Virus record (IMG/VR): IMGVR_UViG_3300038424_000251
Span: 301,300-365,299 of that record
DNA: 64,000 nt
Direction: 5' to 3' (one strand)
Positions 38,308 through 58,327 of this stretch are shown here, in pieces. Positions within the stretch are counted from its first letter, which is position 1. The number at the start of each line of letters is the position of its first letter. The position numbers and the translations under genes were made by a program. Under the pieces are notes generated by a model, which was not told the origin of the DNA, made no database searches, and worked only from the letters and a program-made list of their open reading frames with translations.

Positions 38308-40359
38308 GTGAAAAAATCTCAATTCCAATCATTGATTAAAAATGTGGTTGAAGAACAATTAGGACGATGGGTTTCTCCTAGTGAGTTAAATAAACAAACA
38401 CCACAACAGAAGGGAGTTGTGCAATATTTGGAAAAACTTAATTATCGTGTTACATCCACAATGCCTGCAGATACAACAGGTAAAACTGTAATAGTTATTA
38501 TGGATAAATCGGGTGGAAAATATGGCCATGAAGAAGCATTAGTAAATCCTAATGGTTCTGTGACTGGAAAGGCTGCATCTGATATTCCTATGAGCCTTAC
38601 GGGTGGAGGTTTAGATTTTTCTATTGTTGAAAAAAAATTACATCTTAAATTTCGGATTAAAAATATGGTAGAAAAAGCTATATTGAATGAGATACTTGGT
38701 GTTGGTCCAGATATTCATCAAGCTACAATAACTCAGAAACGAGCTATTAACACATTGAAAAAAATAGGATTTATTCTTAGAAATACTTATCCAACATCAG
38801 ATGGCGTAGGTATAATTCTCATAAGACATAAAGGGAAGCTTGGTAGTCCAGTAACAAGAGTTGCAAATATAAAACCAGATGGAAGTATTAATGAGCCACA
38901 TATAAATCTTAGTAAATATCTTAGTTTTGTTGGTGGTGGCGCTGGAGGTTCTGAACGTGGAGTTTCTTTACATGAATTGAGTAAACAAACATCATCACAA
39001 ACAAGAGCAGTTAATCATTTTGAAAGGAGAGGGTATCATATAAAATCTACGTCGCCTATAAGTGACAGAACTATAAATGTTATTATGACTAAATCGGGTG
39101 GTAGATTTGCCAGTGATGAAGTAATAATTGGACCAGATGGTTCTGTAAATGGAAAAGTATCTGCTACTCCTATTATTCATGAAAAAATGACTACGAGAGC
39201 CGACTTAGCAGCTGATGTGGGTCTTGGTGGCACAATGAAAGCTGTGAACGTTGCAGAAGAAAATGAGGAAAGAACATGCGACTGTGGTAGTGGATTACCT
39301 AGTAAATGGGAACGTGATGGTCAGGGTATTCCTTTGGTAAGAGCGTGTGATAAATGTAGAAAGCAGAAACTATCAAAATATCGTCCAGAAATTCTTAGAC
39401 CATATACTCAAGCAGATGTGGATGAACCGATTGAACCAGAAGATTATGAGGAACAAATGGGTGCAGTTGGTGGATATGCTACTCCATATGTGTTTAAAAA
39501 GAAAATAAGAGAAAAAATCGGTCCTGATGGAAAGTATCAAGATGATATGGAAAGTGGTGTTAGGTCAAAAAGAATTTCTGGTCTTTCTGAAATTGGTGTA
39601 GGTTTGACTACGGCTGCCGCAGTAGGGGGTATTGCTTTTATTTATATGTTATTAAACCGTATAATTAACCGTGGTTCTAACATTTACGCTGGTGGTGGTG
39701 AGTGGGAGAAAATAGAGATAACACAAGATAACATAAATATGATGCTTGATTTGATAAAAGCACATAATCCAAGACTAAAAGATGCAGATATTGAATTTGT
39801 TAAAAATCAAATTATGAATGAAATAAAGGGTGGTACAGTAAAAACCGTGGGAGATTTAAAAAAATATTTAAAAGCAAGAGAATTGGAATCGAGAAAAAAA
39901 TTAGAAGAAATACATAGGTCAGGACTCCATAGGTTAGGAATGGATTATTCTATAATTAAAAAAGTAAGAAATGCAGCTTCTAGATTTTTTAAGGTCCCTG
40001 TAGGAAATATTGAAAATATTAAAGTATTATATAAAATTACTCCTACTGATATTGTGTTTGAAATTATTTTGGGGCCACCAAGATGGGAAAGAAAATTTAT
40101 AAGATTTCATGGTATAAATAATCCTTTTGAAGTATGGGATGAAGAGCAAGAGAAATTTGTACCAACTCTTAAAACAGTTAGAAATTTTCCTCCAGAGGAA
40201 GAAGAAAATATTCAGGAAATGACAGCAACGGGTGCTATAGCTGGATATGCTACACCATTTGCATTTTCTAAAAAGAAAAGTGGTAGTCAAAGAGCATTAG
40301 ATGTAACTAAAAAGTTAGGATTTAAAGTAGTAGAAAGTATTTTAGAGAAGGTGAAGTAA
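38308..40359 (+). CDS. Multi-module putative internal head polyprotein
   Basis: MKKSQFQSLIKNVVEE start; three approximately 60-aa repeats; a CDC..CDKC module; a hydrophobic helix; two GYATP(Y/F)xF motifs. Confidence 0.6.
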   Translation: MKKSQFQSLIKNVVEEQLGRWVSPSELNKQTPQQKGVVQYLEKLNYRVTSTMPADTTGKTVIVIMDKSGGKYGHEEALVNPNGSVTGKAASDIPMSLTGGGLDFSIVEKKLHLKFRIKNMVEKAILNEILGVGPDIHQATITQKRAINTLKKIGFILRNTYPTSDGVGIILIRHKGKLGSPVTRVANIKPDGSINEPHINLSKYLSFVGGGAGGSERGVSLHELSKQTSSQTRAVNHFERRGYHIKSTSPISDRTINVIMTKSGGRFASDEVIIGPDGSVNGKVSATPIIHEKMTTRADLAADVGLGGTMKAVNVAEENEERTCDCGSGLPSKWERDGQGIPLVRACDKCRKQKLSKYRPEILRPYTQADVDEPIEPEDYEEQMGAVGGYATPYVFKKKIREKIGPDGKYQDDMESGVRSKRISGLSEIGVGLTTAAAVGGIAFIYMLLNRIINRGSNIYAGGGEWEKIEITQDNINMMLDLIKAHNPRLKDADIEFVKNQIMNEIKGGTVKTVGDLKKYLKARELESRKKLEEIHRSGLHRLGMDYSIIKKVRNAASRFFKVPVGNIENIKVLYKITPTDIVFEIILGPPRWERKFIRFHGINNPFEVWDEEQEKFVPTLKTVRNFPPEEEENIQEMTATGAIAGYATPFAFSKKKSGSQRALDVTKKLGFKVVESILEKVK

Positions 40360-40360
40360 T

Positions 40361-41491
40361 ATGAGTAAGAAAATTAAATTAAGAAATTTGTTGAATTTAA
40401 CTGAACAGGCTCCACAGCCACCAATGGCAAGCCCGGCTACTCCTGTGCCTGCTCCTGTTCTTCCCGCAGGTATGAGCGCAGGCGGTGCTGCGGCAGAAGA
40501 GGTACCACCAACCCCTCCACCTGCAGAAACATCACCTGAACCGGAAGACCCATCGGAATATGATTTCACTCGTGATTTTAGGGCATTTGAGGATAAAAAG
40601 AACAAGGCTGAATCTGATGCTAAGAAGGTTCTTTTGGATAAAATGAACAAAAGACTTTTGAACAAAACTGTTGTTGCTAATGCTTCACGCGGTTATGGAC
40701 AACCAAAAACCGATTACACTATAGAAAATATTAAGAAAATTAGTGTAGAATTTTGGTATAAGGATTATGTGGTGATAGCAACCGACCAAAATGATAAGAA
40801 ATACTTTTTAACTCCGGGTATAAATATTAAAATTGAAAGTGAAGGTTCTCAACCTGCTCCGGGTGCAGAAGAAAAACCAATAGCAGGTCCAGAAGTTCCA
40901 CCACAAGAACAACCAGCGGAACAACCACCAAAAGCTGGTGATGAAGAAGAACCAAATGTAGCATCTCCATCAGCACCCTCACCAGAAGAACAACCACCAC
41001 AGGCTGTTCCAATGGTTCCTACTCAAGAGCCAGCACCAATGGCTCCACAACAAACGGTGCCAAAACAAGCACCAGCTCCAGCAGAGCCATCGCTGGCAGA
41101 ACCAGAACCGGAGATTCCACATCGTAAAAAGAAAAAGAAACTTCCACCTGTAGCTGAATGGATTCAAAAAGATTTAAATATATTTCTTGTAGAATTTATG
41201 TCTGATAGTATAAAAGATGAAAATGGAAAAGTTAATTTTCTTCCTTATATAAAGAAAACATCAAAAATATTAGCTGAAAATGTAAATACTACCAAAATCA
41301 AGTACCAGTTATTGATTCCTGAAAATCATATGATAAATAATATAGATAACAGAGATATAAAATTGGCTGCAATTGATGCTATGAGACGACAAACGTATTA
41401 TGGCCAATATTCGAAAGGTTCGGTTGATATAGTTAAAAATGGTAGATATTATCTCTTGGAATATGTTAAAGAGATAGGATGGAACGTTTAA
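40361..41491 (+). CDS. Pro/Ala/Glu-rich head-module protein
   Basis: IKLRNLLNLTE N-terminus, PAE-rich linkers, directly upstream of the protease. Confidence 0.6.
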   Translation: MSKKIKLRNLLNLTEQAPQPPMASPATPVPAPVLPAGMSAGGAAAEEVPPTPPPAETSPEPEDPSEYDFTRDFRAFEDKKNKAESDAKKVLLDKMNKRLLNKTVVANASRGYGQPKTDYTIENIKKISVEFWYKDYVVIATDQNDKKYFLTPGINIKIESEGSQPAPGAEEKPIAGPEVPPQEQPAEQPPKAGDEEEPNVASPSAPSPEEQPPQAVPMVPTQEPAPMAPQQTVPKQAPAPAEPSLAEPEPEIPHRKKKKKLPPVAEWIQKDLNIFLVEFMSDSIKDENGKVNFLPYIKKTSKILAENVNTTKIKYQLLIPENHMINNIDNRDIKLAAIDAMRRQTYYGQYSKGSVDIVKNGRYYLLEYVKEIGWNV

Positions 41492-41492
41492 T

Positions 41493-42122
41493 ATGAATAC
41501 TAAACAATTATTAGTTGATTGTATAACCTTTGAATTTATCAAAGATAATCTCTTTGAAGAAGCTATTCGTACTGATGGAAGACGATTGGTTGTCAAGGGT
41601 ATTTTACAACGAGCAAATATAAAAAATCAAAACGGTAGGCTATATAAGAAAGATGTACTTTTTCGTGAATCAAAAAAATATGAGGAAAACTTTGTAAAAG
41701 AAAGAAGAGCATTGGGAGAACTTGACCATCCAGAAAGCTCAGTTGTAAACTTACAAAATGTGTCTCATAATGTTGTAGAATTACATTGGGAAGGTGATGA
41801 CCTTATGGGAACTGTTGAAGTTTTACCTACTCCAAATGGAAATATTTTAAAGGAATTATTTAAAGCCAATATTCGACTTGGAATTTCCAGTCGTGGATTG
41901 GGAACAGTCAATAAAAGTATAAATGAAGATGCAGATGTGGTTCAAGATGATTTTGAACTTATAGCGTTTGATTTTGTATCAAATCCTAGTACAAGGGGCG
42001 CCTTCATGTTTCCATCGGGTACTCTTCAGGAAGGTGTTAAAACCACTATTCAAAATCCAATTACCCAAAAATGGGAAAGGGTTGAGAATATTGTAAGAGA
42101 TATTTTAACTGAAATTGAATAA
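41493..42122 (+). CDS. gp21: Prohead core protease (T4 gp21-like)
   Basis: KNQNGRLY, ALGELDHP (His), LGISSRGLG (Ser), FDFVSNPS. Confidence 0.93.
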   Translation: MNTKQLLVDCITFEFIKDNLFEEAIRTDGRRLVVKGILQRANIKNQNGRLYKKDVLFRESKKYEENFVKERRALGELDHPESSVVNLQNVSHNVVELHWEGDDLMGTVEVLPTPNGNILKELFKANIRLGISSRGLGTVNKSINEDADVVQDDFELIAFDFVSNPSTRGAFMFPSGTLQEGVKTTIQNPITQKWERVENIVRDILTEIE

Positions 42123-42126
42123 TTAT

Positions 42127-42417
42127 ATGAAAAATAAAATACATGAAATAATAGCAAAACCAACTAAGTCTAGTACTTCAGCGCCATTAGGATTTAAATC
42201 CACTGTTTCAGTACCGGGGAGAGCTAAAGAAACTATTCAAACTATTTTGGATAACATTGGCTATAATCCACGAACATTGTCACATCAAGATGCTATACGG
42301 TTGCTTGAAAAGATTAAAGTTATTTTACAAGACCTTATAACTACAAAAAACGTTGAAGAAGAATCAAAATATCCTATATTTGAAAATGTTAGTGGAAATA
42401 CTTTCAAATTAAAGTAA
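42127..42417 (+). CDS. Small hypothetical head-module protein
   Basis: ATG 42127 follows the protease stop; MKNKIHE. Confidence 0.55.
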   Translation: MKNKIHEIIAKPTKSSTSAPLGFKSTVSVPGRAKETIQTILDNIGYNPRTLSHQDAIRLLEKIKVILQDLITTKNVEEESKYPIFENVSGNTFKLK

Positions 42418-42423
42418 TAATAG

Positions 42424-43689
42424 ATGAAGAAATCACAATTAAAATTGATAATTTCAGAAATTATAAAGCAGGCAAAATTACTTGAAAATGGGTTATCTCG
42501 TAATTGTACTGCTAATGATATTACATGGAAAGGAAAAAAAGGATATCAATGTTTAAATTGTGGTGCATGGGCTGAACATTCTTGGGATATTAAACATAAA
42601 AAACAAAATCCATTAGAAAAACCAAAATTTTTTGAAAATGATTTGAATGAAGCAATATCTCCAAAAAGTGTTGCTACAATTGAAAAATGGCGAAAAGAAG
42701 TCGGAGATAGACAAACTGGTGTAAAATTAATAGATACCGTTTTAGAAAGAAGACTTGGATTATTATCAGCAGATTTAGCTGATACTGCTATATTTGCAAA
42801 TGGATTGGATGCAATAGAAGAAGTGTTAAAGGAGAATAATTATGAAGCTGCTATTCGTCAAGCTATAGAAACTGCTAGGGAAATGATAGAGGATGAAGGT
42901 GGGGCAGGAATATGGGAAGAATACAGAAAATTACAAGAAGCTCAAGGATGGGCAGGTGCAGATGATAGATGGATTTCACACCCTATAACAAAAAAGGAAC
43001 CAAAATATTATAAAGAATATGGTGTAACATATTGTCATATTGACCTAAAAAAAGAAAAGTGTCCTCCGGGTATGAAAATTTTCCCCTACACAGAAGAACA
43101 TGTTCCTACAAAGAAAAAATTTCCAAGACAAATATGTTGTTATAATGAAAATGATTTTCGCAAATTATTAGGGCATTGGAATACAGCAGTGTGGAAATAC
43201 GAACCAACTAGTTCAATGTTACAAGAGAAAGTAAATAGGTCAGAATTAAAATTTATTATTAAAGAAATTGTCAGAGAAATTTATTCTGAACAATTTCGAC
43301 AAGATGAAATTAGTAATAAATGGAAAGCATTAGCAAGCGCCGCTTTGGTTGGATATGCTGGATTGCATACTCCTTTTGGAACAAAAACCGCTCAACATTG
43401 GAGTCAAACACCTGCTGGACAACAAATTGTAATGACGGCTAGACAAATGTGGAATCAAGTACCACCAGCTCAACGAACAGCAGAAAAGGCTAAACAAATA
43501 TGGGGTCAAATAATAAAACCGGGTCATATTGATATGCCCAATCCAAACGAACCATTACCATCAGAAAAAGGTATGAGTCCTTGGGATTTAGCTGGTAAAT
43601 ATACTGCAAGAAATGTGGACCTTACTCAAAAATTACAACCGTTTGTTAAACGTTATCTACCTCCTGTTAGTTCAAAGAATCCTTCTTAA
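42424..43689 (+). CDS. Multi-module putative internal head polyprotein
   Basis: MKKSQLKLIISEII start and internal RSELKFIIKEIVRE; modules bounded by LLE, LNE, LQE and LQE. Confidence 0.6.
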   Translation: MKKSQLKLIISEIIKQAKLLENGLSRNCTANDITWKGKKGYQCLNCGAWAEHSWDIKHKKQNPLEKPKFFENDLNEAISPKSVATIEKWRKEVGDRQTGVKLIDTVLERRLGLLSADLADTAIFANGLDAIEEVLKENNYEAAIRQAIETAREMIEDEGGAGIWEEYRKLQEAQGWAGADDRWISHPITKKEPKYYKEYGVTYCHIDLKKEKCPPGMKIFPYTEEHVPTKKKFPRQICCYNENDFRKLLGHWNTAVWKYEPTSSMLQEKVNRSELKFIIKEIVREIYSEQFRQDEISNKWKALASAALVGYAGLHTPFGTKTAQHWSQTPAGQQIVMTARQMWNQVPPAQRTAEKAKQIWGQIIKPGHIDMPNPNEPLPSEKGMSPWDLAGKYTARNVDLTQKLQPFVKRYLPPVSSKNPS

Positions 43690-48436: not shown

Positions 48437-49036
48437 TTATCCTTCTTTTGGTTTTTTAACAACCCAAGGTTTTATTATCTTGCTTAGAGGAACTGTTGGA
48501 ACAGGTGCAATTGGTGTAGGGCCTTGGCTAAGTTTAGATACATTATATTCATATTTGTAAGCGTTAAAAATTCTGTATGTAAGACTTTCAGTATAACGCT
48601 GAAGTAATATAAGTTTTTCTTGAGCTGTAAACAGGTCGTCTCCTATTTTATGGGGGTCTGTGGATTTTAATCTCCTTCTTTTTAAATCTACATTATTAAA
48701 TTCCAAGTAATCACCAAAAGTATAATCGTGTATGTTATCAGCGATATCTTTTACTGATTTAACAACTTTCATTTTATCTCTAAAATCATTATAATAGTAT
48801 GATGGAAGAAATTTTCCTTGAGGACCACTAACATTACTAATTGTTTTTGATACTGATACGAATGGAATTCCTCTTAAATGTCTAAAATTTGAGTCAAGAT
48901 ACATTGCGTAATTTTCCTTATTGCCATCTACGAAAACAATAACTGAGGGGGTGGGTAAACTTTCCAACAAATCTACAATATGATTGACATCTAATGGAGT
49001 TCTGCCGCTTCTTGTCGTTTCTCCAACTTCATTTAA
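48437..49036 (-). CDS. Hypothetical protein, probably the -1 frameshift extension of the 49815 gene
   Basis: The frame stays open for 22 codons upstream of the weak TTG start, back to the A9 run, and reads LNEVGETTR; no ATG in this frame. Confidence 0.55.
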   Translation of the reverse strand, partial: LNEVGETTRSGRTPLDVNHIVDLLESLPTPSVIVFVDGNKENYAMYLDSNFRHLRGIPFVSVSKTISNVSGPQGKFLPSYYYNDFRDKMKVVKSVKDIADNIHDYTFGDYLEFNNVDLKRRRLKSTDPHKIGDDLFTAQEKLILLQRYTESLTYRIFNAYKYEYNVSKLSQGPTPIAPVPTVPLSKIIKPWVVKKPKEG

Positions 49037-49815
49037 TTTTTTTTTAAGTGTTGTTCGGTAAGACTTTCTTCTTCATCCGATACTTCACCTATTCTTGGAG
49101 CAGGTGCTGAAATTTCTTGTTGTGGAATTGCAGAAGCAATTTCGTCCAAGGATTGTATTTCAAAATATCTTTCCATTTTTCTACCCATATCTTCGTAAAG
49201 AGCATTTAATTGCTGAAGACCACCGTAACATTCTTTGGCTCGTTTTGAAAAATCTTTGGTAATCTTTTTTACTTCATTAAAATCTCTTTTGACAACTTCG
49301 GCTTGAAAATAATCACCAGATTCGGTCATAGCGTAAGATTCTGCCATTTGACCAATTTCAGAAAGATTTTTTGCCATTTCCATTAAAGCCGTTTCACATC
49401 GTAAAACTTTTCCATATTCGTTGAATTTGCTAACCTTCTCCATCAATTCTTTTTTTTGTTGTGGGGAAAGTTTTTTAACTTCATCACCAAATCTAGCACC
49501 ACCATCTCTGGGAATATTGGATAAATTTTCAACAATTTTCTTTAGACTAAACTCTTGTACTTCTAAATTTTCTTTCATAAGATTTTCGGTTTCTTCTTCT
49601 TTCCCAAACATTTTATCTTGACAGTTTTGGCAAAGACCACTAATTCTAAATTCTTTTCTACTTTGTTCATCACGAAATTTATTCACATCTACAGGTTTAT
49701 GACAGAAAGGACAAATTTTATCGATAATAGCTTTTTTTCTGTCAATGCCCGTTAATCTCTTGATATCAGTATCAAGTTGTGGATCTTTTTCAGCTGGGCT
49801 CCAATCGCCATTCAT
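49033..49815 (-). CDS. Head-associated protein with an N-terminal Zn ribbon and a helical domain
   Basis: CPFC..CQNCQD; LMKE, IVE and LTE sites; start set at ATG 49815, 6 nt after a minus-strand TATTTATA. Confidence 0.6.
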   Translation of the reverse strand: MNGDWSPAEKDPQLDTDIKRLTGIDRKKAIIDKICPFCHKPVDVNKFRDEQSRKEFRISGLCQNCQDKMFGKEEETENLMKENLEVQEFSLKKIVENLSNIPRDGGARFGDEVKKLSPQQKKELMEKVSKFNEYGKVLRCETALMEMAKNLSEIGQMAESYAMTESGDYFQAEVVKRDFNEVKKITKDFSKRAKECYGGLQQLNALYEDMGRKMERYFEIQSLDEIASAIPQQEISAPAPRIGEVSDEEESLTEQHLKKN

Positions 49816-49820
49816 ATGTC

Positions 49821-50123
49821 TTATAAATAGGGCCGGTTTTCCCATTTTTGCTTATAATTAGCAAAATATTCTTCAAGGTCTTTAAATTTTAGGAATGTTC
49901 GTTTTTCTTTTTTTGTTCTATCTTCAATAATAAAACCTGTGCCTTTTTTATGGCTTAATCTCATTTCTGGTCTTTTAAGAGCATAATAAAACATACCATC
50001 ATTTTTAAAACCCATATCTTCAAGATACATAGCATCGGTTGCTTTCCAATTATCAACCGGAGTTAATCCTTTATCACGTTCGTCGCTAACAATATGTTTT
50101 AATAATTCTGTAAGTTTAATCAT
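49821..50123 (-). CDS. Small protein with an MIKLTELL N-terminus
   Basis: Same N-terminal motif as 58046 and 40361. Confidence 0.6.
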   Translation of the reverse strand: MIKLTELLKHIVSDERDKGLTPVDNWKATDAMYLEDMGFKNDGMFYYALKRPEMRLSHKKGTGFIIEDRTKKEKRTFLKFKDLEEYFANYKQKWENRPYL

Positions 50124-51131: not shown

Positions 51132-52724
51132 ATGATTAATAGTGAACTATTGAAAGAAGCGATTGCTGATGCTAAGGCAGTAAGAGCCACTGCTCTCGCC
51201 AATGCTAAAGCCGCTCTTGAAGAAGCCTTCGCTCCCCGTTTTGAGGCAATGTTTGCCGACAAATTAAAAGAGGAATCCGAAGAAGAAGAAGACCAAGAAG
51301 AGGGACTACAGGAAGTAGAAGCTCCAAATCAGGTTCATGGAAGTGGTGGAGAAGCTAAGGGACCAGCAACCAAAGCCGTTTCTAAAGGTAATCCCAAAAC
51401 ACCAAAAGGTGGCGCCGGTGATGTGGATTTTAAAGCCGTTCAAGCTGGATTAGGCCCAACAGGCGTTCCTAAACTCGGTAAGAAAGTTAATGAAACTGCC
51501 GAAGAAGAAGAAGAGGAAGATGAAGGTAGGAAGAAAATGGATGAAACTGCCGAAGAGGAAGATGAAGGTAGAAGGGAAGAAGAGGGCGAGGAGGAAGATG
51601 AGGGTAGGGTTGAAGAAGCTGGTCTAACTTCGGAAGATTTAGATGAAATTATTGCAGAGTTGGAAAATGAAGTAGCAGAGGAAGAAGAAGGTAGAACGGA
51701 AGAAGAACCTGCTGCTCCAGAACTAACACCAGCACCAGAAGATAGTGGTGGAGTGTCATCGCCTGTTACTGGTGATGAAAGAGAACCCGTTACTGGTGAC
51801 GAAGAACCTGCTGCCAATATTGAAGCAGAACCGGGTAGTGAAGTTGATATTAATCTTGAACCGGAACCAGAAGCTGAACCGGGAGCTGATACAGTCCCCC
51901 CAACAGCTATGGATGCTGGTGGAGCAAGTAGGCGACCAGTTAGAGAACCTGCTGAAGAACCGGTTGAAGAACCTGTTGGAGCTGCAGAAGATGAAGAAAA
52001 TATCAATCTAGATGAATTACTCGCCGCTCTTAATGAAGAAGGCGAAGAAGAAGAGGAAGAAGAAGGGTATGAAGAAATGGATGAAGCCTTACAAAATCAA
52101 GGTCTTCCAACCAAAGAACTTGCTGGTCAGGACAAAACCGGTGGTGTAAAGGGTTATCCACCCGGTCCAGATGCTAGTAAGAGACAGCTACCGGGTAAAA
52201 ATCATAATATTCAAGGTAAAGGCAACATTGGTAGTGGGTCTGAAACAGGTAAACCAATGGCAGAAGCATCTCAATACAGGGTTGCTTTGAAAGAAGCCTA
52301 TAAAACCATTGAATTCCTCCGTGGACAAATTAATGAGGTCAATCTGTTGAATGCTAAACTACTTTACACGAACAAGTTGTTTAAAGAATTCGCAGGTGTT
52401 TTGGACGATTCATATCGTATGAAAATCGTTGAATCATTTGACCTAACAAAAAGTGTTCGTGAAGTCAAGCTGGCCTACGCCCTATTGGCGGAGTCCTTGA
52501 ATTTCGGTACGCAAATGACAAAAACCCACTCTGTAAAATCGGTTGTAAAACCGGTTTCGCAAAAGGGACAAGTTAAGCAAATTACCGAAGGATTCGCATC
52601 AAAGCCGGTGTCATCAACAAAACCTTCCAAGTTAATTACTGAAGGTAATGAGATGGCTCTTAGATTCAAGAAGCTCGCTGGAATCAAAGATACACCGAAG
52701 ACTACTACTCCTGAAAAGAAGTAA
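51132..52724 (+). CDS. Prohead core scaffolding protein (gp22-like)
   Basis: LLKEAIADAKAVRATALANAKAALEEAF, very acidic middle, INEVNLLNAKLLYTNKLF, ITE..RFKKLAGI; directly upstream of the MCP. Confidence 0.8.
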   Translation: MINSELLKEAIADAKAVRATALANAKAALEEAFAPRFEAMFADKLKEESEEEEDQEEGLQEVEAPNQVHGSGGEAKGPATKAVSKGNPKTPKGGAGDVDFKAVQAGLGPTGVPKLGKKVNETAEEEEEEDEGRKKMDETAEEEDEGRREEEGEEEDEGRVEEAGLTSEDLDEIIAELENEVAEEEEGRTEEEPAAPELTPAPEDSGGVSSPVTGDEREPVTGDEEPAANIEAEPGSEVDINLEPEPEAEPGADTVPPTAMDAGGASRRPVREPAEEPVEEPVGAAEDEENINLDELLAALNEEGEEEEEEEGYEEMDEALQNQGLPTKELAGQDKTGGVKGYPPGPDASKRQLPGKNHNIQGKGNIGSGSETGKPMAEASQYRVALKEAYKTIEFLRGQINEVNLLNAKLLYTNKLFKEFAGVLDDSYRMKIVESFDLTKSVREVKLAYALLAESLNFGTQMTKTHSVKSVVKPVSQKGQVKQITEGFASKPVSSTKPSKLITEGNEMALRFKKLAGIKDTPKTTTPEKK

Positions 52725-52766: not shown

Positions 52767-54614
52767 ATGGAAAATATTAAATCATTGTTAACAAACACTC
52801 TCAATCCTCAAGCTCGTTTGATGCAGGAAACCCGTGGTCTTGTGACCAAGTGGGATAAAACCGGTCTTCTTGATGGTATTAAGAGTGATATTGAGAAGTC
52901 CAATATGTCGGTCTTGCTCGAAAATCAGGCTAAACAACTGATTGAAGAAGCAACTGCTACTGGTACTTCCGCAAACTCTGAACAGTGGGCTGGCGTAGCT
53001 CTCCCGTTGGTCAGACGTGTATTTGCTGAATTTGCTGCGAAGGAATTCGTATCCGTTCAGCCTATGAACCTCCCATCTGGTCTTGTGTTCTACTTGGATT
53101 TCAAGTATGGCTCACCTCACGGTGGTAATCCTGCCGATACATCAGGTTCATATTATCAATCATTGTTCGGTGGTACTGGTGCTAAACTAGGTTCTACTGA
53201 TACATTCGGCGGTGGTCTATACGGCGCAGGCCGATATGGTTACACCATTAATCAAAAAGCTGCAACTGCAGTAACATTTAGTGCAGCTACATCAACATTG
53301 GAAGATATTGACTGGTTGGCTAATTATTATACTCAATATGCCTCATCTGGTTCAGTACAAGGAATTTTGAATAGTATTTCAGCATCGTTTAATAACAATC
53401 AGCTTATTACTTTTAAAACTTCAAATTTTTATAGTACTACGACTAGTCAAGGTAATCCGTTTGACCCATTAGCTGTTCGTTCATTCATGCCATATAGCAT
53501 TGTTACTGGATCTACAGCAGGGCTAACTGCTTCATTTCAATCAGGTAGTGCTGCCGGCTCCGGTCCTATGTATTTCCCACCATTTACAAAATTTGTAGTG
53601 GGTACTGGTATCGATGCTGGTGGTGCTCAGGTTGGTGAAATCCAGTTTGTCTTATCAGCTTCGGCTGGTGCTACTGGTTCCTTCACTGGTAATATTTATT
53701 ACACAGTTCAACCAAGCCCACAAGACCGTGGTGACTTCGAAGATAATCCAAACAATGCTAATGCTACTGGTACTGATACGGGATTTGTTTATGGAACAGG
53801 TAAGTCAACTACTGATACTGGTCTTAACAAGGATATCGGTATTCCAGAAGTAAACTTGCAACTTAACTCCGAACCAATCGTAGCTAAGACACGTAAGTTG
53901 AAAGCTGTCTGGACTCCTGAACTTGCTCAAGACTTGAATGCTTATCATAGCATTGACGCAGAAGCAGAATTGACTGCTCTGTTGTCTGAATATGTTTCAA
54001 TGGAAATTGACCTTGAAATTCTTGATATGTTGATTAACGCAGTATTACCTATCAATATTGAACGTTGGAGTGCAAGGCTTAATACGGAAATAGTTCCTAC
54101 TGGAACTGGTACTTACCAATTCGTTCAAACAACAACGGCAGGTACTGGTGGTTACTACACCAAGGCAACATGGTACCAAACTCTTGGTAACAAGATTCAA
54201 AAGGTATCCAACAGGATTCACCAATTGACGCTTCGTGGTGGTGCTAACTTCATGGTTATCTCCCCAACAGTGGCAACTGTTCTTGAATCTATTCCGGGAT
54301 TCGTAGTGAATACCGATGGCGACCAAGCAAAGTTTGCTATGGGCGTTTCAAGGGTTGGTTCATTTGCTTCAAGGTTCCAAGTTTACAAGAACCCATATAT
54401 GACTGATAATATCATTCTAATGGGCTTCCGTGGTAATAACTTCTTGGAAACTGGTGCAGTATATGCTCCATACATTCCATTGGTTCAGACACCGTTAGTG
54501 TATGACCCTGTGAACTTCACGCCAAGACGTGGTGTAATGACCCGTTACGCGAAGAAGATTGTTCGTCCTGAATTCTATGGCAAGATTTACATTGCCGATT
54601 TGGACACGGTATAA
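52767..54614 (+). CDS. gp23: Major capsid protein (T4 gp23-like)
   Basis: VSVQPMNLPSGLVFYLDF, AKTRKLKAVWTPELAQDLNAYH..DAEAEL, YAPYIPL, FTPRRGVMTRYA. Confidence 0.96.
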   Translation: MENIKSLLTNTLNPQARLMQETRGLVTKWDKTGLLDGIKSDIEKSNMSVLLENQAKQLIEEATATGTSANSEQWAGVALPLVRRVFAEFAAKEFVSVQPMNLPSGLVFYLDFKYGSPHGGNPADTSGSYYQSLFGGTGAKLGSTDTFGGGLYGAGRYGYTINQKAATAVTFSAATSTLEDIDWLANYYTQYASSGSVQGILNSISASFNNNQLITFKTSNFYSTTTSQGNPFDPLAVRSFMPYSIVTGSTAGLTASFQSGSAAGSGPMYFPPFTKFVVGTGIDAGGAQVGEIQFVLSASAGATGSFTGNIYYTVQPSPQDRGDFEDNPNNANATGTDTGFVYGTGKSTTDTGLNKDIGIPEVNLQLNSEPIVAKTRKLKAVWTPELAQDLNAYHSIDAEAELTALLSEYVSMEIDLEILDMLINAVLPINIERWSARLNTEIVPTGTGTYQFVQTTTAGTGGYYTKATWYQTLGNKIQKVSNRIHQLTLRGGANFMVISPTVATVLESIPGFVVNTDGDQAKFAMGVSRVGSFASRFQVYKNPYMTDNIILMGFRGNNFLETGAVYAPYIPLVQTPLVYDPVNFTPRRGVMTRYAKKIVRPEFYGKIYIADLDTV

Positions 54615-54640: not shown

Positions 54641-54673
54641 AAAGGAGCCGTAGAAATACGGCTCTTTTCTTTT
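54641..54673 (+). terminator. Rho-independent terminator after the MCP
   Basis: GAGCCGTA-GAAA-TACGGCTC stem followed by TTTTCTTTT. Confidence 0.9.
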
Positions 54674-54731
54674 GCATTTATTTAATTTTATTTCATTCTT
54701 GTTTAGATTTTATTGTAGAATTTTGATATCT

Positions 54732-55589
54732 ATGGAATATAAATCAAAAATTATGAAAATAGCGAATGTACATGGTGTAGAATGGAAAATGGACGATAAT
54801 ATTTATGAATGGCATAGACGGTATAAGTGTATTGAAGTGGGACCAGAATCTATCTGGAATTCAAACCCAGAAATAGTTTCTGAAATGACAGCTTTTAAAT
54901 TATATTGTATAGAAAATTCTCCGAGTGTTTTTATTGATATTGGAACATATTGTGGAATAGTTTCTTCGGTATATTGTTCTTTAGTAAAAGACCATCGATG
55001 TTATTCAATAGAACCTATTCGTTCTCATTGTGAGAGATTACAAAATACTGCTAAATTAAATAATTGGAATTTAAGTACACATCCAATTGGGTTAAATAAT
55101 TATGTTGGAAAATGTTATTATCACAATACTAATATGGCACGATTTACAAACGACCCAAACTTTAAAGTGTCTGATGCTGAGATTAATAGTAATCCTGAAA
55201 ATGCTAAAATACATGAAGTTAATATTGATACCTTAGATAATTTTGTTAAATCAAATAATATAAAACCAAATTTAATAAAAATAGATGTAGAGGGATACGA
55301 AGTACCAATACTTGAAAAAGCTCAAGAAACATTATCAAACGATGCTGTAGATTTATTTATTGAAACACATAGAAATGAATGTATAGAACTTGGTTGGAAT
55401 ATAGAAAAATTATGTGATTATATACCTCAAAAGGATTATATTTTTTATACTACAGGTCTTTTGTATGACCAAAATTCTCTTCCAAGTTATATTTTTAGGC
55501 AAAGAATTTTTACTGATTTAAAAGATTATATACTTAATCATAAAAGTACTATGAGATTTGTGGCTATAAATAAAAAAAATTTAGGTTAA
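54732..55589 (+). CDS. FkbM-family SAM-dependent methyltransferase
   Basis: FIDIGTYCG, YSIEP, DTLDNF, LIKIDVEGYE. Confidence 0.85.
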   Translation: MEYKSKIMKIANVHGVEWKMDDNIYEWHRRYKCIEVGPESIWNSNPEIVSEMTAFKLYCIENSPSVFIDIGTYCGIVSSVYCSLVKDHRCYSIEPIRSHCERLQNTAKLNNWNLSTHPIGLNNYVGKCYYHNTNMARFTNDPNFKVSDAEINSNPENAKIHEVNIDTLDNFVKSNNIKPNLIKIDVEGYEVPILEKAQETLSNDAVDLFIETHRNECIELGWNIEKLCDYIPQKDYIFYTTGLLYDQNSLPSYIFRQRIFTDLKDYILNHKSTMRFVAINKKNLG

Positions 55590-55670: not shown

Positions 55671-56225
55671 ATGACAAATCTATCTATCCATTTATGTGAT
55701 ACTTCAGCATCTTTAGTTTTAACATCTGCTTCATTTGCAGATCAATCAATTAGTTCAAGCTATGCTATAAGCTCATCTTGGACGTTATTAACACAACAAC
55801 AGATTTCATGTTCTTGGGCAAGTTCATCTATGTCATCATCTTGGGCACCACCAACCTCTGTTTTGAGATATACAACTACTGCGTCATTTGCAAGTGGACC
55901 ATATATGTACAATATTTCGTTACCGTTTATTCCTTTTAGAACAGGAGTAGGAATCTTGTGTATTAATAATGATGGGACTAGTGGTTATCAATCAGGGTCA
56001 TTGTTAGATATTAGCACTATTAATGGCGCAGCAACCGTGGGTGGTGCCAGTACTGGTCAAATCTTTTGGAATATTAATGAAAATATTGTTACTGTTAGGA
56101 CTACTAATCGTACTGTTGGTTATGAAGCTAGTTGGGCACTTTGGAAAGCTACTACTTATGGTGATAATCCTATAGGTGGGTTATCATCATGGAATAATTT
56201 TGTAATTCAAGTGAATGCAGAATAA
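55671..56225 (+). CDS. Small Ser-rich fibre-like protein
   Basis: SSSYAISSSW/SWASSS stalk followed by a beta-rich C-terminus; TATTTATA at 55629. Confidence 0.55.
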   Translation: MTNLSIHLCDTSASLVLTSASFADQSISSSYAISSSWTLLTQQQISCSWASSSMSSSWAPPTSVLRYTTTASFASGPYMYNISLPFIPFRTGVGILCINNDGTSGYQSGSLLDISTINGAATVGGASTGQIFWNINENIVTVRTTNRTVGYEASWALWKATTYGDNPIGGLSSWNNFVIQVNAE

Positions 56226-56242
56226 TTTTAATATTTGAATAC

Positions 56243-56275
56243 AAAGGAGCCGAATTTCTTCGGCTCTTTTCTTTT
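56243..56275 (+). terminator. Rho-independent terminator, near-copy of 54641
   Basis: GAGCCGAA-TTTC-TTCGGCTC stem followed by TTTTCTTTT. Confidence 0.9.
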
Positions 56276-56313
56276 GCATTTATTCAATAAAAATTGAATA
56301 TTTATATTAGAAT

Positions 56314-56703
56314 ATGAAGCAAAGTCAACTTAAACAACTTATTAAAGAGATTGTATATTGTATTTTTAAAGAACAGTTTGGTGAACCAACTCCACAAAAG
56401 TTAATACCTGATGATGAAGAAGAACTATGGAAAATAGTACAGAGTTTACCTATTGATTATTCAATTCAATTTTCAATTTTTCATCCAATATCAAAAGGGT
56501 TGTTGATTATACTTCATAGTAGTAAGGGAAATGTATTTGCAGCTACCAGTCTTGGTGGGTTAAAACATGCTGGTCCACCTGATGGAAAATGGCATGTACC
56601 GGGTGAGAAAATTTTAAGAATTTTAGTAAAGGATGTATATGATTATGGTGAAAATAATGATGTATATTATTCCATAGTTAAAACTACTCCAACTAACCTT
56701 TAA
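56314..56703 (+). CDS. Putative internal head protein
   Basis: MKQSQLKQLIKEIV..FKE N-terminus; own TATTTATA. Confidence 0.6.
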   Translation: MKQSQLKQLIKEIVYCIFKEQFGEPTPQKLIPDDEEELWKIVQSLPIDYSIQFSIFHPISKGLLIILHSSKGNVFAATSLGGLKHAGPPDGKWHVPGEKILRILVKDVYDYGENNDVYYSIVKTTPTNL

Positions 56704-56724
56704 AATTTTTATATTTATATCAAT

Positions 56725-58053
56725 ATGACCGATTTTATTTTTAAGGAATCATATCATGATAATATGTCAGATGCTGAAAAAGAAGCATTGGCTCTCTCTT
56801 ATTGGTCAATAGGACAGTCAGATGAAGATGGTGAAGATATTTCGTGGAAAAATTGGTGTTGGATTTATAAAAATGACATATTGCGCTACAAAAAAGGACA
56901 AACGCATGGTATCAACTTTGGTATTGATAGAGAAAATTATTTTAGAGGTTGGTATGATGCTAAAAAGAATACAATATCTGTGGTTTTTCCTGCACATGAA
57001 CTTAGAAAATTTGGTAATAGAAGGCCATCAGAAGATGACATACCACAATTACTTTATCAAAAACTAATTAATACATTTGGCGCTGGGCGTCCAAAATTCA
57101 TTGTATTTGAGAATGCTACACTGATAAAAAGAAGTGAATTAAAATTGCTTCTAAAAGAAATTGTTCAACAAATTCTTCTAAACGAAAGAGAAGAGAATGA
57201 ATATTATTGGTTAGAACCAAATTTACAGTTTCAAAGAGTTCCGTGGGAAGGACATGCAAATTGGGCAAGAAATTATTTAGAGAATATGGGAAAAAAATTA
57301 TCTTATGGTGATTATGATGATGTGGGTGTTTATAATAGAATGTATGAATTGGGATTTGTTAGAGTTGTCAAAGTTGGTTATTTTGATGGTGATATTCTGA
57401 CATATAATTATAAAAAAGGATTTCCGCCTTCTCCACAAAAAATAAAAGCAATGAAGAATTTTGCAATAGAAAAGAATTGTGACACAATTAGAGATGATAC
57501 GAGTGGAAGAATTGAAAATTTGTTACAGGAAGGAATATTTCTTAAAGAAACAATGACTTATAAAGAACTTTTAGCTTTAACAACTCCTGAAAGAAAAGAA
57601 CGTGCAGCAAATGTAAGAGTTCGCTCTATTCCTGTTAGTATTGAAGAGGGATTAGAACAATGGAATTTCAGATATAAATCCAGTCCACAAACCACTGTAA
57701 CTGATGAACCATTTGAAGGTCATATTACATTCTTAAAAGGTAGAGTAGAACGAAGTGATGATGCTATGAATTTAGAGTGTAAAGTTGATTGTAGTTGTCC
57801 TGATTTCATGTATAGATTTGCTTATAATGATACTCAAAAAGGTGCAAGTGATATTGGACCTGACAGTTTAAGCGGTTGTATTAATAGAAAACCAAAACCA
57901 GCTTATGATTATGGTGAAGGCTTATGTAAACACTTGGCAGCATTGCGTAGATATTTACAAACAAAAATATTAGCGACTAGAAGAAGTAATTTATTTGAAG
58001 CAATCGGTGATGTGGCAAAACAAGGACCATTTAATATAACCTATTATGATTAA
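56725..58053 (+). CDS. Multi-module putative internal polyprotein with a C-terminal SWIM-type Zn finger
   Basis: Internal KRSELKLLLKEIVQQILLNE; CSCPDF..GLCKHL. Confidence 0.6.
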   Translation: MTDFIFKESYHDNMSDAEKEALALSYWSIGQSDEDGEDISWKNWCWIYKNDILRYKKGQTHGINFGIDRENYFRGWYDAKKNTISVVFPAHELRKFGNRRPSEDDIPQLLYQKLINTFGAGRPKFIVFENATLIKRSELKLLLKEIVQQILLNEREENEYYWLEPNLQFQRVPWEGHANWARNYLENMGKKLSYGDYDDVGVYNRMYELGFVRVVKVGYFDGDILTYNYKKGFPPSPQKIKAMKNFAIEKNCDTIRDDTSGRIENLLQEGIFLKETMTYKELLALTTPERKERAANVRVRSIPVSIEEGLEQWNFRYKSSPQTTVTDEPFEGHITFLKGRVERSDDAMNLECKVDCSCPDFMYRFAYNDTQKGASDIGPDSLSGCINRKPKPAYDYGEGLCKHLAALRRYLQTKILATRRSNLFEAIGDVAKQGPFNITYYD

Positions 58054-58327
58054 ACTTAAATCATTATTAACTGAATTTCAAGGTGAAAATTTAAAAGTGG
58101 GAGATTTTGTTCTTACAACTGGGAAGGGTCCATTAACAGGACCTAATTCTCCATTGGGGTTTGATAATCTTCCAGCAATAATTGTAGGTAAACGACAAAA
58201 TAAGTATCTTATTATGTTTAGAGGGTCAATCAGTCCATTAGAAGCCACAGATGAACAAATAATAAAAGTATCAAAACCTCATAGATTTCCTCTATCACCT
58301 TGGGTCAAAAAGTATCTTGGAAAATAA
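58046..58327 (+). CDS. Small protein with an MIKLKSLLTE N-terminus and an SH3/KOW-like body
   Basis: LKVGDFV..AIIVG..KYLIMF. Confidence 0.55.
   Translation: MIKLKSLLTEFQGENLKVGDFVLTTGKGPLTGPNSPLGFDNLPAIIVGKRQNKYLIMFRGSISPLEATDEQIIKVSKPHRFPLSPWVKKYLGK

What the first reader, a model, noticed from the sequence alone, without database searches (positions are those of the whole stretch)
38308..58327. Putative capsid-packaged cargo system: shared targeting helices plus gp21-cleavable polyproteins
Seen: otherwise unrelated proteins around the head genes share two short motifs. Motif A, K(S/R)(Q/E)LKxLI(K/S)EIV, occurs at the N-termini of 38308, 42424 and 56314 (a weaker version at 6306) and internally at about 38638, 43231 and 57121. 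Motif B, IKLxxLL, occurs at the N-termini of 40361, 50123(-) and 58046. Most copies end in or just before a hydrophobic-X-Glu (LLE, LNE, FKE, LTE). Known: T4 gp21 cleaves after (I/L)-X-E, and T4 internal proteins carry a short N-terminal capsid-targeting sequence removed at such a Glu. Inference: these are address tags that load diverse cargo into the prohead, where the gp21 homologue at 41493 releases modules that are then injected with the DNA. Internal tags and multi-module chains go beyond the T4 single-IP model.
Basis: partly seen in the sequence, partly recalled or inferred. Interest (0 to 1): 0.85.

Follow-up and report, generated by a model that had tools for sequence, protein, structure and literature searches.

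The report
Shared capsid-address leaders on phage proteins
Many unrelated proteins of this uncultured T4-like giant phage and its relatives start with the same 10-20-residue peptide ending in a protease-type Glu site, probably a tag that loads them into the assembling head, as T4 does on a much smaller scale.

Summary
The window is the head module of a T4-like jumbo phage (an identical contig is 365 kb). Two N-terminal leaders, A (MKKS-E/Q-LKxLIKEIV...) and B (MIKLKxLLxE), sit on proteins with unrelated bodies around an intact gp21-type (S77) protease.

- A model trained only on relatives finds four of the six window copies of A; shuffles never reach their scores.
Nearly all matches are true N-termini, and many lie beside homologues of this head module. 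In 596 Gb of cellular genomes there are 13 loci: four matches buried in long ORFs, the best-supported others on phage-like MAG contigs.
- 165 A-bearing proteins have 117 unrelated bodies, including enzymes.
- Leader B has hydrophobic residues at 4, 7 and 8 and Glu at 10, the positions that determine targeting and processing in the T4 capsid targeting sequence.
- The capsid protein has the same hydrophobic-x-Glu where T4 gp23 is cut.
- All four internal copies correspond to N-termini of separate or shorter genes in relatives, so the "polyproteins" arose by fusion or duplication.

Packaging, cleavage and injection are inferred, not shown. I rate this a new variant of a known kind.

The parts
38308..40359 (+). 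683-aa multi-module protein at the gp67 position. It holds a degenerate leader A (aa 1-17), then three repeats of a ~60-70-aa domain (aa ~20-91, 135-195, 217-286). A second leader copy (aa 109-128, nt 38632-38691) precedes repeat 2. After that come a Cys4 segment and a hydrophobic segment (aa 429-449). There are two copies of a GYATP(Y/F)xF-KKK peptide (aa 384-399, nt 39457-39504; aa 638-657, nt 40219-40278). The C-terminal ~50 aa are conserved.
   Evidence: repeats: E 5e-19, 3e-9, 1e-5. Orthologues run from 73 to 747 aa and share only the leader and the C-terminal peptide.
40361..41491 (+). 376-aa protein at the gp68 position. It has a B-like leader MSKKIKLRNLLNLTE (nt 40361-40405), Pro/Ala/Glu-rich linkers and two conserved domains.
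   Evidence: The leader is conserved in orthologues of 47-76% identity.
41493..42122 (+). Prohead maturation protease of the gp21 type (Peptidase S77), with catalytic His and Ser present.
   Evidence: phrog_207 at 1.8e-52. Pfam PF03420 at 94.3 bits against a cut-off of 27. Aligns to T4 gp21 structure 5JBL at 1.2e-14, with ELDHP and ISSRGLG matching the His and Ser positions that are Ala in that crystal construct but His and Ser in wild-type T4 gp21.
42424..43689 (+). 421-aa two-module protein. Leader A is at aa 1-21 (nt 42424-42486). A second, internal leader is at aa 271-289 (nt 43234-43290) and heads the C-terminal module.
   Evidence: A standalone 146-aa homologue of the C-terminal module (P0001, 49% identity, 93% coverage) begins with Met plus the leader.
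49033..49845 (-). 270-aa protein: an N-terminal Cys-rich domain fused to a module headed by an internal leader-like FSLKKIVENL (aa 99-108, nt 49522-49551).
   Evidence: Homologues in L007, L009 and L021 start just upstream of this point. Those in L031, L032, L176 and L210 start with B-type leaders.
49821..50123 (-). 100-aa protein with the B-variant leader MIKLTELLKHIVSDE (nt 50079-50123). The predicted mature part is basic (pI 9.4).
   Evidence: The leader is conserved in orthologues down to 38% identity.
51132..52724 (+). Putative scaffolding protein, assigned by its position directly upstream of the capsid gene. Its N-terminus MINSELLKE has hydrophobic-hydrophobic-x-Glu at residue 9, as in T4 gp22 (MLKEQLIAE).
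   Evidence: There is no detectable sequence similarity to T4 gp22 and no PHROG or Pfam hit.
52767..54614 (+). Major capsid protein (gp23 family). The predicted maturation site is after Glu61, in QLIEE|ATATG (nt 52935-52964).
   Evidence: PF07068 at 242.9 bits. In the alignment the T4 gp23 site FLTE65|AE lines up with LIEE|A (window), IVSE|A (immuto), LISE|A (Mel-JY01) and LNE|V (L035, L036).
56314..56703 (+). 129-aa protein with a canonical leader A (aa 1-20, nt 56314-56373, ending FKE). The body is unique to this phage.
   Evidence: (23.7 bits).
56725..58053 (+). 442-aa protein with an internal leader A (aa 135-154, nt 57127-57186). The codon where Met would be is ATA. The C-terminal domain is SWIM-like.
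   Evidence: L047 has a 288-aa relative that begins MKRQELKLLLKEIL and shares the C-terminal domain. L044 has a 584-aa relative with a B leader.
58046..58327 (+). 93-aa protein with a canonical 10-residue leader B, MIKLKSLLTE (nt 58046-58075). The predicted mature part is basic (pI 9.9).
   Evidence: The same 10-mer type heads at least 144 ORFs in IMG/VR.
6306..6860 (+). 184-aa protein in the baseplate module with a weak A-like N-terminus. Syntenic genes in relatives carry canonical leader A.

Best explanation
The two motifs are N-terminal propeptides of the same kind as the T4 capsid targeting sequence.

Proposed mechanism:
1. An amphipathic unit, hydrophobic-x-x-hydrophobic-hydrophobic-x-Glu, occurs once in leader B and twice in tandem in leader A. 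It binds the tagged protein to the scaffolding core while the prohead is built.
2. The gp21-type S77 protease (41493) then cuts after the Glu, as it does in the capsid protein and the core proteins.
3. The mature protein is left inside the head.

Two tagged genes are conserved and sit at the gp67 and gp68 positions (38308, 40361). They are probably core components. The other tagged genes (42424, 49033, 49821, 56314, 56725, 58046, and hundreds in relatives) are variable passengers that acquired the leader.

Proteins with two leaders arose by fusion or tandem duplication of leader-plus-body units. If the sites still work, these proteins would be cut into their modules.

Shown: the leaders exist, are modular, are specific to this phage clade, end in the expected site, and cluster around an intact protease.
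Inferred: targeting, cleavage, retention in the virion, and ejection.
For: 1. Reality and modularity.
- An independent HMM recovers four window copies at 13.6-23.7 bits; the shuffle maximum is 9.8.
- In 434,451 aa of non-redundant ORFs from related loci there are 180 hits. Of these, 146 are at the N-terminus, 21 are at a Met near the start, and 13 are internal. N-terminal placement is partly built in, because many loci were picked with an ATG-led pattern; the short upstream open frames are the independent check.
- Conservation stops at about residue 20.
- The bodies of 165 leader-A proteins fall into 117 BLAST clusters, 103 of them singletons.
- Pfam domains begin just after the leader: Ser_hydrolase at residue 28, PolyA_pol at 34, AAA_33 at 22-29.
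- Codons vary synonymously (Ser TCN/AGY, Leu with six codons), so selection acts on the peptide.

2. Clade specificity.
- About 50 of the A loci (my count from the listing) and 44 of the B loci carry homologues of this window's TerL, portal, 37430, protease, scaffold or capsid genes.
- In 596 Gb of cellular genomes pattern A finds 13 loci. Four matches lie more than 200 codons inside long ORFs. Two others (L296, with five leaders, and L302) sit on MAG contigs with protease homologues; L296 also has scaffold and capsid homologues.

3. Position.
- In loci fetched through the protease alone, 24 of 37 leader genes lie within -4 to +2 kb of it. Only 1 of 108 genes lies in the -10 to -4 kb interval.

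4. Match to T4.
- The T4 CTS is MKTYQEFIAE (PMC8442874). Targeting depends on residues 4 and 7, and processing on residues 8 and 10 (PMC9026906, section 2.6).
- T4 gp24 starts MAKINELLRE and T4 gp21 has LIE-9.
- Leader B has Leu4, Leu7, Leu/Ile8 and Glu10.
- In loci not selected for B, 19 of 19 such N-termini are terminal and 11 of 19 have Glu at position 10, against a Glu frequency of 5.7% in the window proteome.
- gp21 cuts after L/I-x-E (PMC9026906).

5. Protease and substrate.
- The S77 protease has both catalytic residues.
- The capsid protein has hydrophobic-hydrophobic-x-Glu aligned to T4 gp23 Glu65.
- The residues after the leader in the 38308 family (E|MTATG, E|ATATD, E|ASMTG) resemble the predicted mature N-terminus of the capsid protein (E|ATATG).

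6. Internal copies are former N-termini.

7. Predicted mature B cargo is basic, as T4 internal proteins are: median pI 9.35 against 6.79 for other ORFs, p = 3e-9 (PMC8442874).
Against: - There are no proteomic, structural or genetic data for any member. The clade is uncultured. The closest cultured relatives (immuto, Mel-JY01) show the leader clearly only on the gp67-position gene.
- Leaders also occur outside head modules: on a conserved gene in the baseplate module and in arrays beside baseplate genes (L209, L284).
- Some tagged proteins are enzymes not usually thought of as virion contents: a CCA-adding enzyme, P-loop kinases and an RNase T-like exonuclease.
- TerL, which is not an internal head protein, has a similar N-terminal helix, LRDIIKEE.
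- The apparent excess of loci near head genes is partly a detection bias. Only homologues of this structural window could be recognised.
- Glu at the end of the leader was imposed by both DNA patterns. Only the smaller unbiased set tests it.
- The two copies in 38308 fail the independent model.
- A hydrophobic-x-Glu just upstream of internal leaders is seen in 4 of 4 window cases but only 5 of 13 in relatives, against 20% expected.
Confidence: 0.6

Rival explanations
1. The leaders are a shared N-terminal helix with a function unrelated to the capsid. Possibilities include docking to another phage assembly or chaperone, regulated proteolysis or stability control, or a preferred translation-initiation context that has become fixed in this clade.
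For: - Leader-bearing genes include RNA and nucleotide enzymes and lie in baseplate-side arrays as well as head modules.
- TerL has a similar N-terminus.
- A-rich Lys codons directly after ATG are common in AT-rich genomes.
Against: - Synonymous codon variation, together with strict conservation of the hydrophobic register and of Glu, argues against an mRNA-level signal.
- The register equals that of the experimentally mapped T4 CTS (PMC9026906).
- The same site type occurs at the capsid protein's maturation site.
- Leader genes peak next to the protease in loci chosen without reference to leaders.
Confidence: 0.22
2. The tagged proteins of the window are prohead core or scaffold components that are degraded and expelled (gp67/gp68/gp22 analogues). 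They would not be cargo that stays in the head and is injected.
For: - 38308 and 40361 occupy the gp67 and gp68 positions between portal and protease.
- The minimal orthologue of 38308 is 73 aa in immuto, close to T4 gp67 at 80 aa.
- Both are conserved across the clade.
- 40361 is acidic and low-complexity.
Against: - There is no sequence similarity to gp67 or gp68.
- This cannot explain more than 100 unrelated and often enzymatic bodies, or the unique small basic proteins 58046 and 49821.
- It is compatible with the main explanation for two genes only.
Confidence: 0.3
3. The motifs are chance similarities between Lys/Ile/Leu/Glu-rich helices in an AT-rich genome.
For: - The window is 32% G+C.
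- Motif B alone is short.
- Enrichment of the unit within the window is only 3.5-fold, p = 0.012.
- Two out-of-frame hits reach 12 bits.
Against: There are hundreds of N-terminal copies in one phage clade. In 596 Gb of cellular genomes there are 13 loci, four of them matches buried inside long ORFs.
Confidence: 0.02
4. 56314 and 56725 form one polyprotein made by reading through the stop codon between them.
For: The two ORFs are in the same frame, separated by TAA plus 21 nt.
Against: - 56725 has its own ATG.
- At E<1e-5, no 56314 homologue was found in the related loci; two loci gave weak hits at E<1e-3 (L157, L167). The relatives that carry 56725 homologues have none.
- A shared frame is expected one time in three.
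- No recoding signal was looked for or found.
Confidence: 0.03

Closest known systems
T4 capsid targeting sequence (CTS) of internal proteins IPI, IPII, IPIII and Alt, and the 10-residue propeptide of gp24
   Same: - A short N-terminal leader of 10-20 aa, shared by otherwise unrelated proteins.
- Hydrophobic residues at positions 4, 7 and 8 and Glu at position 10. Compare leader B MIKLKxLLxE with T4 MKTYQEFIAE and MAKINELLRE.
- It ends in the L/I-x-E site of a gp21-family protease.
- The predicted mature cargo is often basic.
- The cargo repertoire is hypervariable between relatives.
   Different: - Different sequence. Homology cannot be shown for so short a peptide.
- Leader A is a tandem double unit of about 20 aa.
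- The scale is far larger: at least 117 unrelated bodies in the sample, against a handful in T-even phages.
- The cargo includes recognisable enzymes.
- Many tagged genes form arrays inside the head module.
- Two-leader chains occur.
- No experimental evidence exists here.
Propeptides and multiply cleaved head and inner-body proteins of giant phages phiKZ, 201phi2-1 and SPN3US
   Same: A gp21-related protease cuts after Glu at several sites in many head proteins. Paralogues share conserved N-termini (SPN3US gp53 and gp54). The propeptides are proposed to target proteins to the prohead (PMC5694885).
   Different: Those propeptides are mostly longer than 100 residues, and the motif is S/A-x-E rather than hydrophobic-x-E. 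The capsid and portal genes here belong to the T4 (gp23/gp20) Pfam families. The leaders here are short and nearly identical across hundreds of genes.
T4 prohead core proteins gp67 and gp68
   Same: 38308 and 40361 lie between the portal and protease genes, as gp67 and gp68 do. The minimal orthologue of 38308 is 73 aa (gp67 is 80 aa). They contain several hydrophobic-x-Glu sites.
   Different: No detectable sequence similarity. An extra conserved gene (37430) lies between the portal gene and these two. The window's 38308 has grown to 683 aa through inserted and duplicated modules.
Phage-head-delivered polymorphic proteins (MuF-fused toxins, P1 Dar proteins)
   Same: A conserved trafficking part is joined to variable payloads that are carried in the capsid.
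   Different: Those use large domains or protein-protein dependencies, not a cleavable 10-20-residue leader.

Membership tests
T4-type capsid targeting sequence (CTS) propeptide | Located at the extreme N-terminus and 10-20 residues long | tested here: met
   Of 180 hits, 146 are N-terminal and 21 more are at a likely true start. Conservation ends at residue ~20 for A. In the B set the sequences diverge by eye after residue 10 (Glu10 was fixed by the search pattern).
T4-type capsid targeting sequence (CTS) propeptide | Shared by proteins whose mature parts are unrelated | tested here: met
   117 BLAST clusters among 165 leader-A proteins. The bodies carry different Pfam families.
T4-type capsid targeting sequence (CTS) propeptide | Hydrophobic determinants at residues 4 and 7 (targeting), and residue 8 plus Glu10 (processing), as mapped in IPIII | tested here: met
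   58046 has L4, L7, L8 and E10. In the unbiased set 11 of 19 have Glu10. Leader A has the same spacing shifted by two residues, and repeats it. The T4 positions are from PMC9026906, section 2.6.
T4-type capsid targeting sequence (CTS) propeptide | The genome encodes a gp21-family protease that cuts after hydrophobic-x-Glu | tested here: met
   The protease family and its catalytic residues are met. Specificity is only inferred, from the capsid protein site aligned to T4 Glu65.
T4-type capsid targeting sequence (CTS) propeptide | The leader is sufficient to incorporate a protein into the prohead and is removed there | not testable with these tools
   Needs virion proteomics or reporter fusions.
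T4-type capsid targeting sequence (CTS) propeptide | Sequence homology to the T4 CTS | tested here: inconclusive
   Only the pattern is shared. Ten residues are too few to establish homology.
Peptidase S77 (T4 gp21 prohead protease), for 41493-42122 | Pfam PF03420 above the gathering score, with catalytic His and Ser | tested here: met
   94.3 bits against 27. His in ELDHP and Ser in ISSRGLG align with the corresponding T4 gp21 positions.
T4 gp67/gp68 prohead core proteins, for 38308 and 40361 | Sequence similarity to gp67 or gp68 | tested here: not met
   No PHROG or Pfam hit. The T4 sequences read show no obvious similarity.
T4 gp67/gp68 prohead core proteins, for 38308 and 40361 | Gene position between portal and protease | tested here: met
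Giant-phage (phiKZ/SPN3US-type) long propeptides | Propeptides longer than 100 residues, cut at S/A-x-E | tested here: not met
   The leaders are 10-20 residues, and P3 is Leu, Ile, Val, Phe or Tyr.
Viral polyprotein | One chain of several functional modules separated by sites that the viral protease cuts | tested here: inconclusive
   Modules and candidate sites are present in 38308, 42424, 49033 and 56725. At least four further two-leader chains occur in relatives. Cleavage is untested. The upstream hydrophobic-x-Glu is not general: 5 of 13.

The most novel reading that the evidence does not exclude
The leaders define an open protein-delivery system. In this clade of T4-like phages, which includes jumbo phages, any gene that acquires the 10-20-residue leader is loaded into the prohead. 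The protease trims it, and it is injected with the DNA. The virion would then carry a large and fast-evolving set of pre-made proteins: kinases, a CCA-adding enzyme, an exonuclease, a hydrolase, possible ADP-ribosyltransferases, and many small basic proteins. These would act before any phage gene is expressed. Fused multi-leader chains would be processed inside the head like polyproteins.
Probability: 0.3. Interest if true: 0.85.

Novelty: new variant of a known kind. Interest (0 to 1): 0.68.

Why it matters
If the leaders work as proposed, they give a sequence-only way to predict which proteins are carried inside the head in a large group of uncultured aquatic phages. For most phages that set is invisible without proteomics.

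It would show that T4's targeting-sequence principle is old, general, and able to serve hundreds of passengers, including enzymes. It would point to many candidate injected counter-defence proteins.

It would also offer new short tags for loading foreign proteins into phage capsids.

It explains the large multi-module proteins of this head module as fusions of tagged units.

Tried and rejected
- tblastn of a 21-residue consensus leader against GenBank phages found nothing, probably because the query is short and the low-complexity filter is on.
- A conserved leader-bearing 134-aa family also found nothing there. 38308 and 42424 have no useful GenBank phage homologues. So no cultured close relative and no virion proteome was available.
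- A full-text search for the leader strings found no paper. A search for the CTS concept in metagenomic T4-like phages found nothing relevant.
- The T4 late-promoter consensus TATAAATA is over-represented in the window (28 against 14.8 expected), but it did not sort leader genes from the others. Expression timing therefore stays open.
Foldseek against the PDB gave nothing below E = 1.
It was re-run without those rows.
- 51132 shows no pairwise similarity to T4 gp22.
- The idea that a hydrophobic-x-Glu always precedes internal leaders held in the window (4 of 4) but not in relatives (5 of 13).
- The idea that L008 shows 42424 split into its two halves was dropped. The extra L008 gene is a different leader-bearing gene. 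The split form of the C-terminal module was found instead in P0001.
- Pfam on an array of B-leader paralogues in huge phage LR756508 gave no significant family.

Full report
**What the window is.** The region holds a T4-type head module. In order it contains:
- large terminase (33437);
- portal (35287; PF07230);
- a conserved unknown gene (37430);
- 38308 and 40361;
- a gp21-type prohead protease (41493; PF03420, 94 bits; phrog_207);
- 42424;
- an island of accessory genes;
- a putative scaffold (51132);
- the gp23-family capsid protein (52767; PF07068).

This rests. An identical IMG/VR contig is 365 kb long. The nearest GenBank capsid proteins belong to an uncultured 484-kb phage, Flavobacterium phage immuto, Microcystis phage Mel-JY01 and Rhodothermus phage RM378. 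The protease aligns with the T4 gp21 structure 5JBL and keeps the catalytic His and Ser.

**Checking the observation.** To avoid circularity I trained a profile only on leaders from relatives whose protease is at most 85% identical, then scanned all six frames of the window.
- It found 56314 (23.7 bits), 42424 (20.2), the internal copy at 57127 (15.8) and the internal copy at 43237 (13.6).
- Twenty shuffles never exceeded 9.8 bits.
- Two out-of-frame hits near 12 bits mark the noise level.
- The two copies in 38308 are degenerate and are not found this way. They qualify only because the good N-terminal leader of the L007 and L008 orthologues aligns with residue 109 of the window protein.
- Motif B is too short to stand on the window alone (3.5-fold N-terminal enrichment of the 7-residue unit, p = 0.012).

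**The leaders are a property of a whole phage clade.** I fetched 37 loci through the protease gene alone. In these, genes on both sides of the protease begin with leader A while differing in length and content. One locus (L033) has at least eight small genes beginning MKKSELRQIIREEI... between the protease and the scaffold.

A pattern for MIKLKxL(L/I)xE did the same. Nearly all matches have a stop codon a few codons upstream, so they are true N-termini. The ORFs are mostly 50-300 aa with unrelated continuations.

About 50 of the A loci (my count from the listing) and 44 of the B loci carry homologues of this window's terminase, portal, 37430, protease, scaffold or capsid genes.

As a control I ran the A pattern against 596 Gb of bacterial and archaeal genomes. 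It found 13 loci. Four matches lie more than 200 codons inside long ORFs. Two others (L296, with five leaders, and L302) sit on MAG contigs with protease homologues; L296 also has scaffold and capsid homologues. Most of the remaining matches are N-terminal on MAG contigs whose origin I did not test.

**Modularity.**
- Conservation of leader A ends near residue 20. The consensus is MKKSELKQIIKEEIxKVLNE.
- The bodies of 165 leader-A proteins form 117 BLAST clusters, 103 of them singletons.
- Where a Pfam domain is recognisable it starts directly after the leader. Examples are a serine hydrolase, a GP88 family protein, Zeta-toxin/AAA_33 kinases, an RNase T-like exonuclease and a CCA-adding/poly(A) polymerase with an HD domain.
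- Codons vary synonymously, for example Ser TCN and AGY, and six Leu codons. The peptide is what is conserved, not the DNA.

**Link to the protease.** In loci chosen without reference to leaders, 24 of 37 leader genes lie within -4 to +2 kb of the protease start. Only 1 of 108 genes lies in the -10 to -4 kb interval.

What is known for T4:
- gp21 cuts after L/I-x-E.
- The first 10 residues of IPIII, MKTYQEFIAE, suffice for packaging.
- Residues 4 and 7 matter for targeting, and residues 8 and 10 for processing (PMC9026906 sections 2.5-2.6; PMC8442874).
- T4 gp24 begins MAKINELLRE, gp22 begins MLKEQLIAE, and gp21 has LIE-9.

Leader B (MIKLKxLLxE) puts Leu at 4, 7 and 8 and Glu at 10, which is the same register. 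Leader A contains the unit hydrophobic-x-x-hydrophobic-hydrophobic-x-Glu twice, ending at E12 and E20.

Both DNA patterns imposed the Glu, so I checked loci that were not selected for B. All 19 N-termini of the MIKLx.LL type are terminal, and 11 of them have Glu at position 10. The Glu frequency in the window proteome is 5.7%.

In an alignment with T4 gp23, the known maturation site FLTE65|AE lines up with LIEE|ATATG in the window. It also lines up with IVSE|A, LISE|A and LNE|V in relatives. The residues that follow the leader in the 38308 family (E|MTATG, E|ATATD, E|ASMTG) resemble that predicted capsid junction.

**The "polyproteins".** Each of the four internal copies corresponds to an N-terminus elsewhere.
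- 42424: the C-terminal module has a standalone 146-aa homologue, P0001, that begins with Met plus the leader (49% identity, 93% coverage).
- 56725: the internal copy has ATA where ATG would be. L047 has a 288-aa relative that starts with the leader and shares the C-terminal domain.
- 38308: the window protein has gained an extra leader-plus-repeat unit in front of the ancestral leader. Its three domain repeats are significant (E 5e-19 to 1e-5).
- 49033: homologues in relatives begin at the internal leader or carry a B leader.

At least four more two-leader chains occur in relatives. So these chains are fusions or duplications of tagged units. Whether the internal sites are still cut is unknown.

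56314 and 56725 are separate genes that share a frame. No read-through needs to be assumed.

**Core proteins versus passengers.** 38308 and 40361 are conserved and lie where T4 has gp67 and gp68. In phage immuto the 38308 orthologue is only 73 aa: a leader plus a conserved GYxTxxAF peptide and tail. In the 484-kb phage LR756508 and in more distant IMG/VR relatives the same minimal architecture recurs. These two are probably core components. There is no sequence similarity to gp67 or gp68.

The other tagged genes are variable. 56314 and 58046 have no homologue at E<1e-5 in any fetched locus; two loci gave weak 56314 hits at E<1e-3. Predicted mature B cargo is markedly basic, with median pI 9.35 against 6.79 for other ORFs (p = 3e-9). 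In the window 58046 has pI 9.9 and 49821 has pI 9.4. T4 internal proteins are likewise highly basic (PMC8442874).

**Caveats.**
- Nothing here shows packaging, cleavage or ejection.
- Leaders also occur on a conserved gene of the baseplate module, and in arrays beside baseplate genes.
- Some tagged proteins are enzymes not normally expected in virions.
- TerL has a similar N-terminal helix.
- The count of loci near head genes is inflated, because only homologues of this structural window could be recognised.

**Comparison and verdict.** This works like the T4 capsid targeting sequence and meets every defining feature of it that sequence data can test. It differs in four ways: the sequence itself, the tandem form of leader A, the scale, and the occurrence of multi-leader chains.

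Multi-site processing and conserved N-termini on diverged paralogues are already known in phiKZ-like giant phages (PMC5694885). Diverse internal proteins sharing only a CTS are known in T-even phages (PMC3012670). I found no description of these particular leaders.

I therefore rate it a new variant of a known kind, with 0.6 confidence in the targeting-and-cleavage mechanism.

Noticed in passing
window 39457-39504 and 40219-40278; also 43351-43386; L169:16415-16636; L170:15497-16033; L305:1456-1968: A third conserved peptide, (A/M)(T/S)xTG..(A/V)GYxTP(Y/F)AF followed by Lys-rich residues and a short C-terminal domain. It is the only part of the 38308 family, besides the leader, that is conserved from Flavobacterium phage immuto to a 484-kb phage. 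38308 has two copies, and 42424 has a related GYAGLHTPFGTK. Function unknown. Its start resembles the predicted mature N-terminus of the capsid protein.
   Followed up: partly
window 37430-38302: A gene of about 290 aa sits directly after the portal gene. At least 88 fetched ORFs are homologous to it. It has no family assignment. The AlphaFold2 model is all-helical (pLDDT 77.5) and has no PDB match below E = 1.
   Followed up: yes
L034:8729-10402, L036:8603-10405, L037:8600-10399, L305:4538-6262; also L034:5-5821 and L033:3536-6466 (portal): In several relatives the prohead protease ORF is 557-600 aa. A block of about 350-390 aa is inserted after residue ~77-80, between the two parts that match the window protease. 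Portal ORFs are similarly enlarged. The pattern looks intein-like.
   Followed up: no
L210:1945-2169, L176:11574-11825, L305:17771-18010, L170:17188-17415; L210:2452-3084; L210:3062-4120: In relatives the island between protease and scaffold carries other genes. One is a ribosomal protein S21-like gene (annotated as RpsU in Mel-JY01). Another looks like a superoxide dismutase with a leader-like N-terminal extension. A third looks actin/ParM-like. These assignments are by eye only.
   Followed up: no
L099:12869-13501(-), L148:8171-8842, L305:39982-41462: Leader-bearing proteins with an LYHxT...NGLxP motif give consistent but sub-threshold hits to ADP-ribosyltransferase-fold families: Tox-ART-HYD1 at 6e-4, Tpt1/KptA at 0.016-0.05, and DarT at 0.015 in a PDB profile search. 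This is a possible parallel to the packaged T4 Alt enzyme.
   Followed up: partly
L305:25754-31633: Just downstream of the capsid gene of the 484-kb phage LR756508 lies an array of six paralogous ~250-280-aa genes (seven ORFs with B-type leaders in all). They share a conserved (Y/F/K/M)R(G/A) motif. No Pfam family was found.
   Followed up: partly
window 33437-33500: The large terminase begins MVNQPTLRDIIKEE, and this is conserved in relatives. It matches the 7-residue leader unit although terminase is not an internal head protein.
   Followed up: partly
window 42115-42417; L007:10632-10886; L010:11575-12135: The C-terminal IFENVSGNTFKLK of the small gene after the protease matches the N-terminus MKKLFENVNGNQFKLVKE of separate genes in relatives. 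This is another peptide whose position shifts between gene ends.
   Followed up: no
window 56299-56306, 56712-56719, 58361-58368, 37400-37411, 32764-32775: TATTTATA (or the palindrome-like TATTTATAAATA) lies just upstream of the starts of 56314, 56725, 58371, 37430 and 32821. It may be a promoter or initiation-region element.
   Followed up: no
L250:188-9822: One relative has a minus-strand cluster of RNA-repair-type genes: a CCA-adding enzyme, and by eye a Thg1-like gene, a possible RNA ligase and a P-loop protein. Several start with B-type leaders.
   Followed up: partly
window 54672-55589, 55671-56225, 59335-63825: An FkbM-type methyltransferase gene follows the capsid gene. There are also Ser-rich proteins with repeated SSxSAS-like runs (184 aa and 1496 aa), presumably fibre-like.
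   Followed up: no
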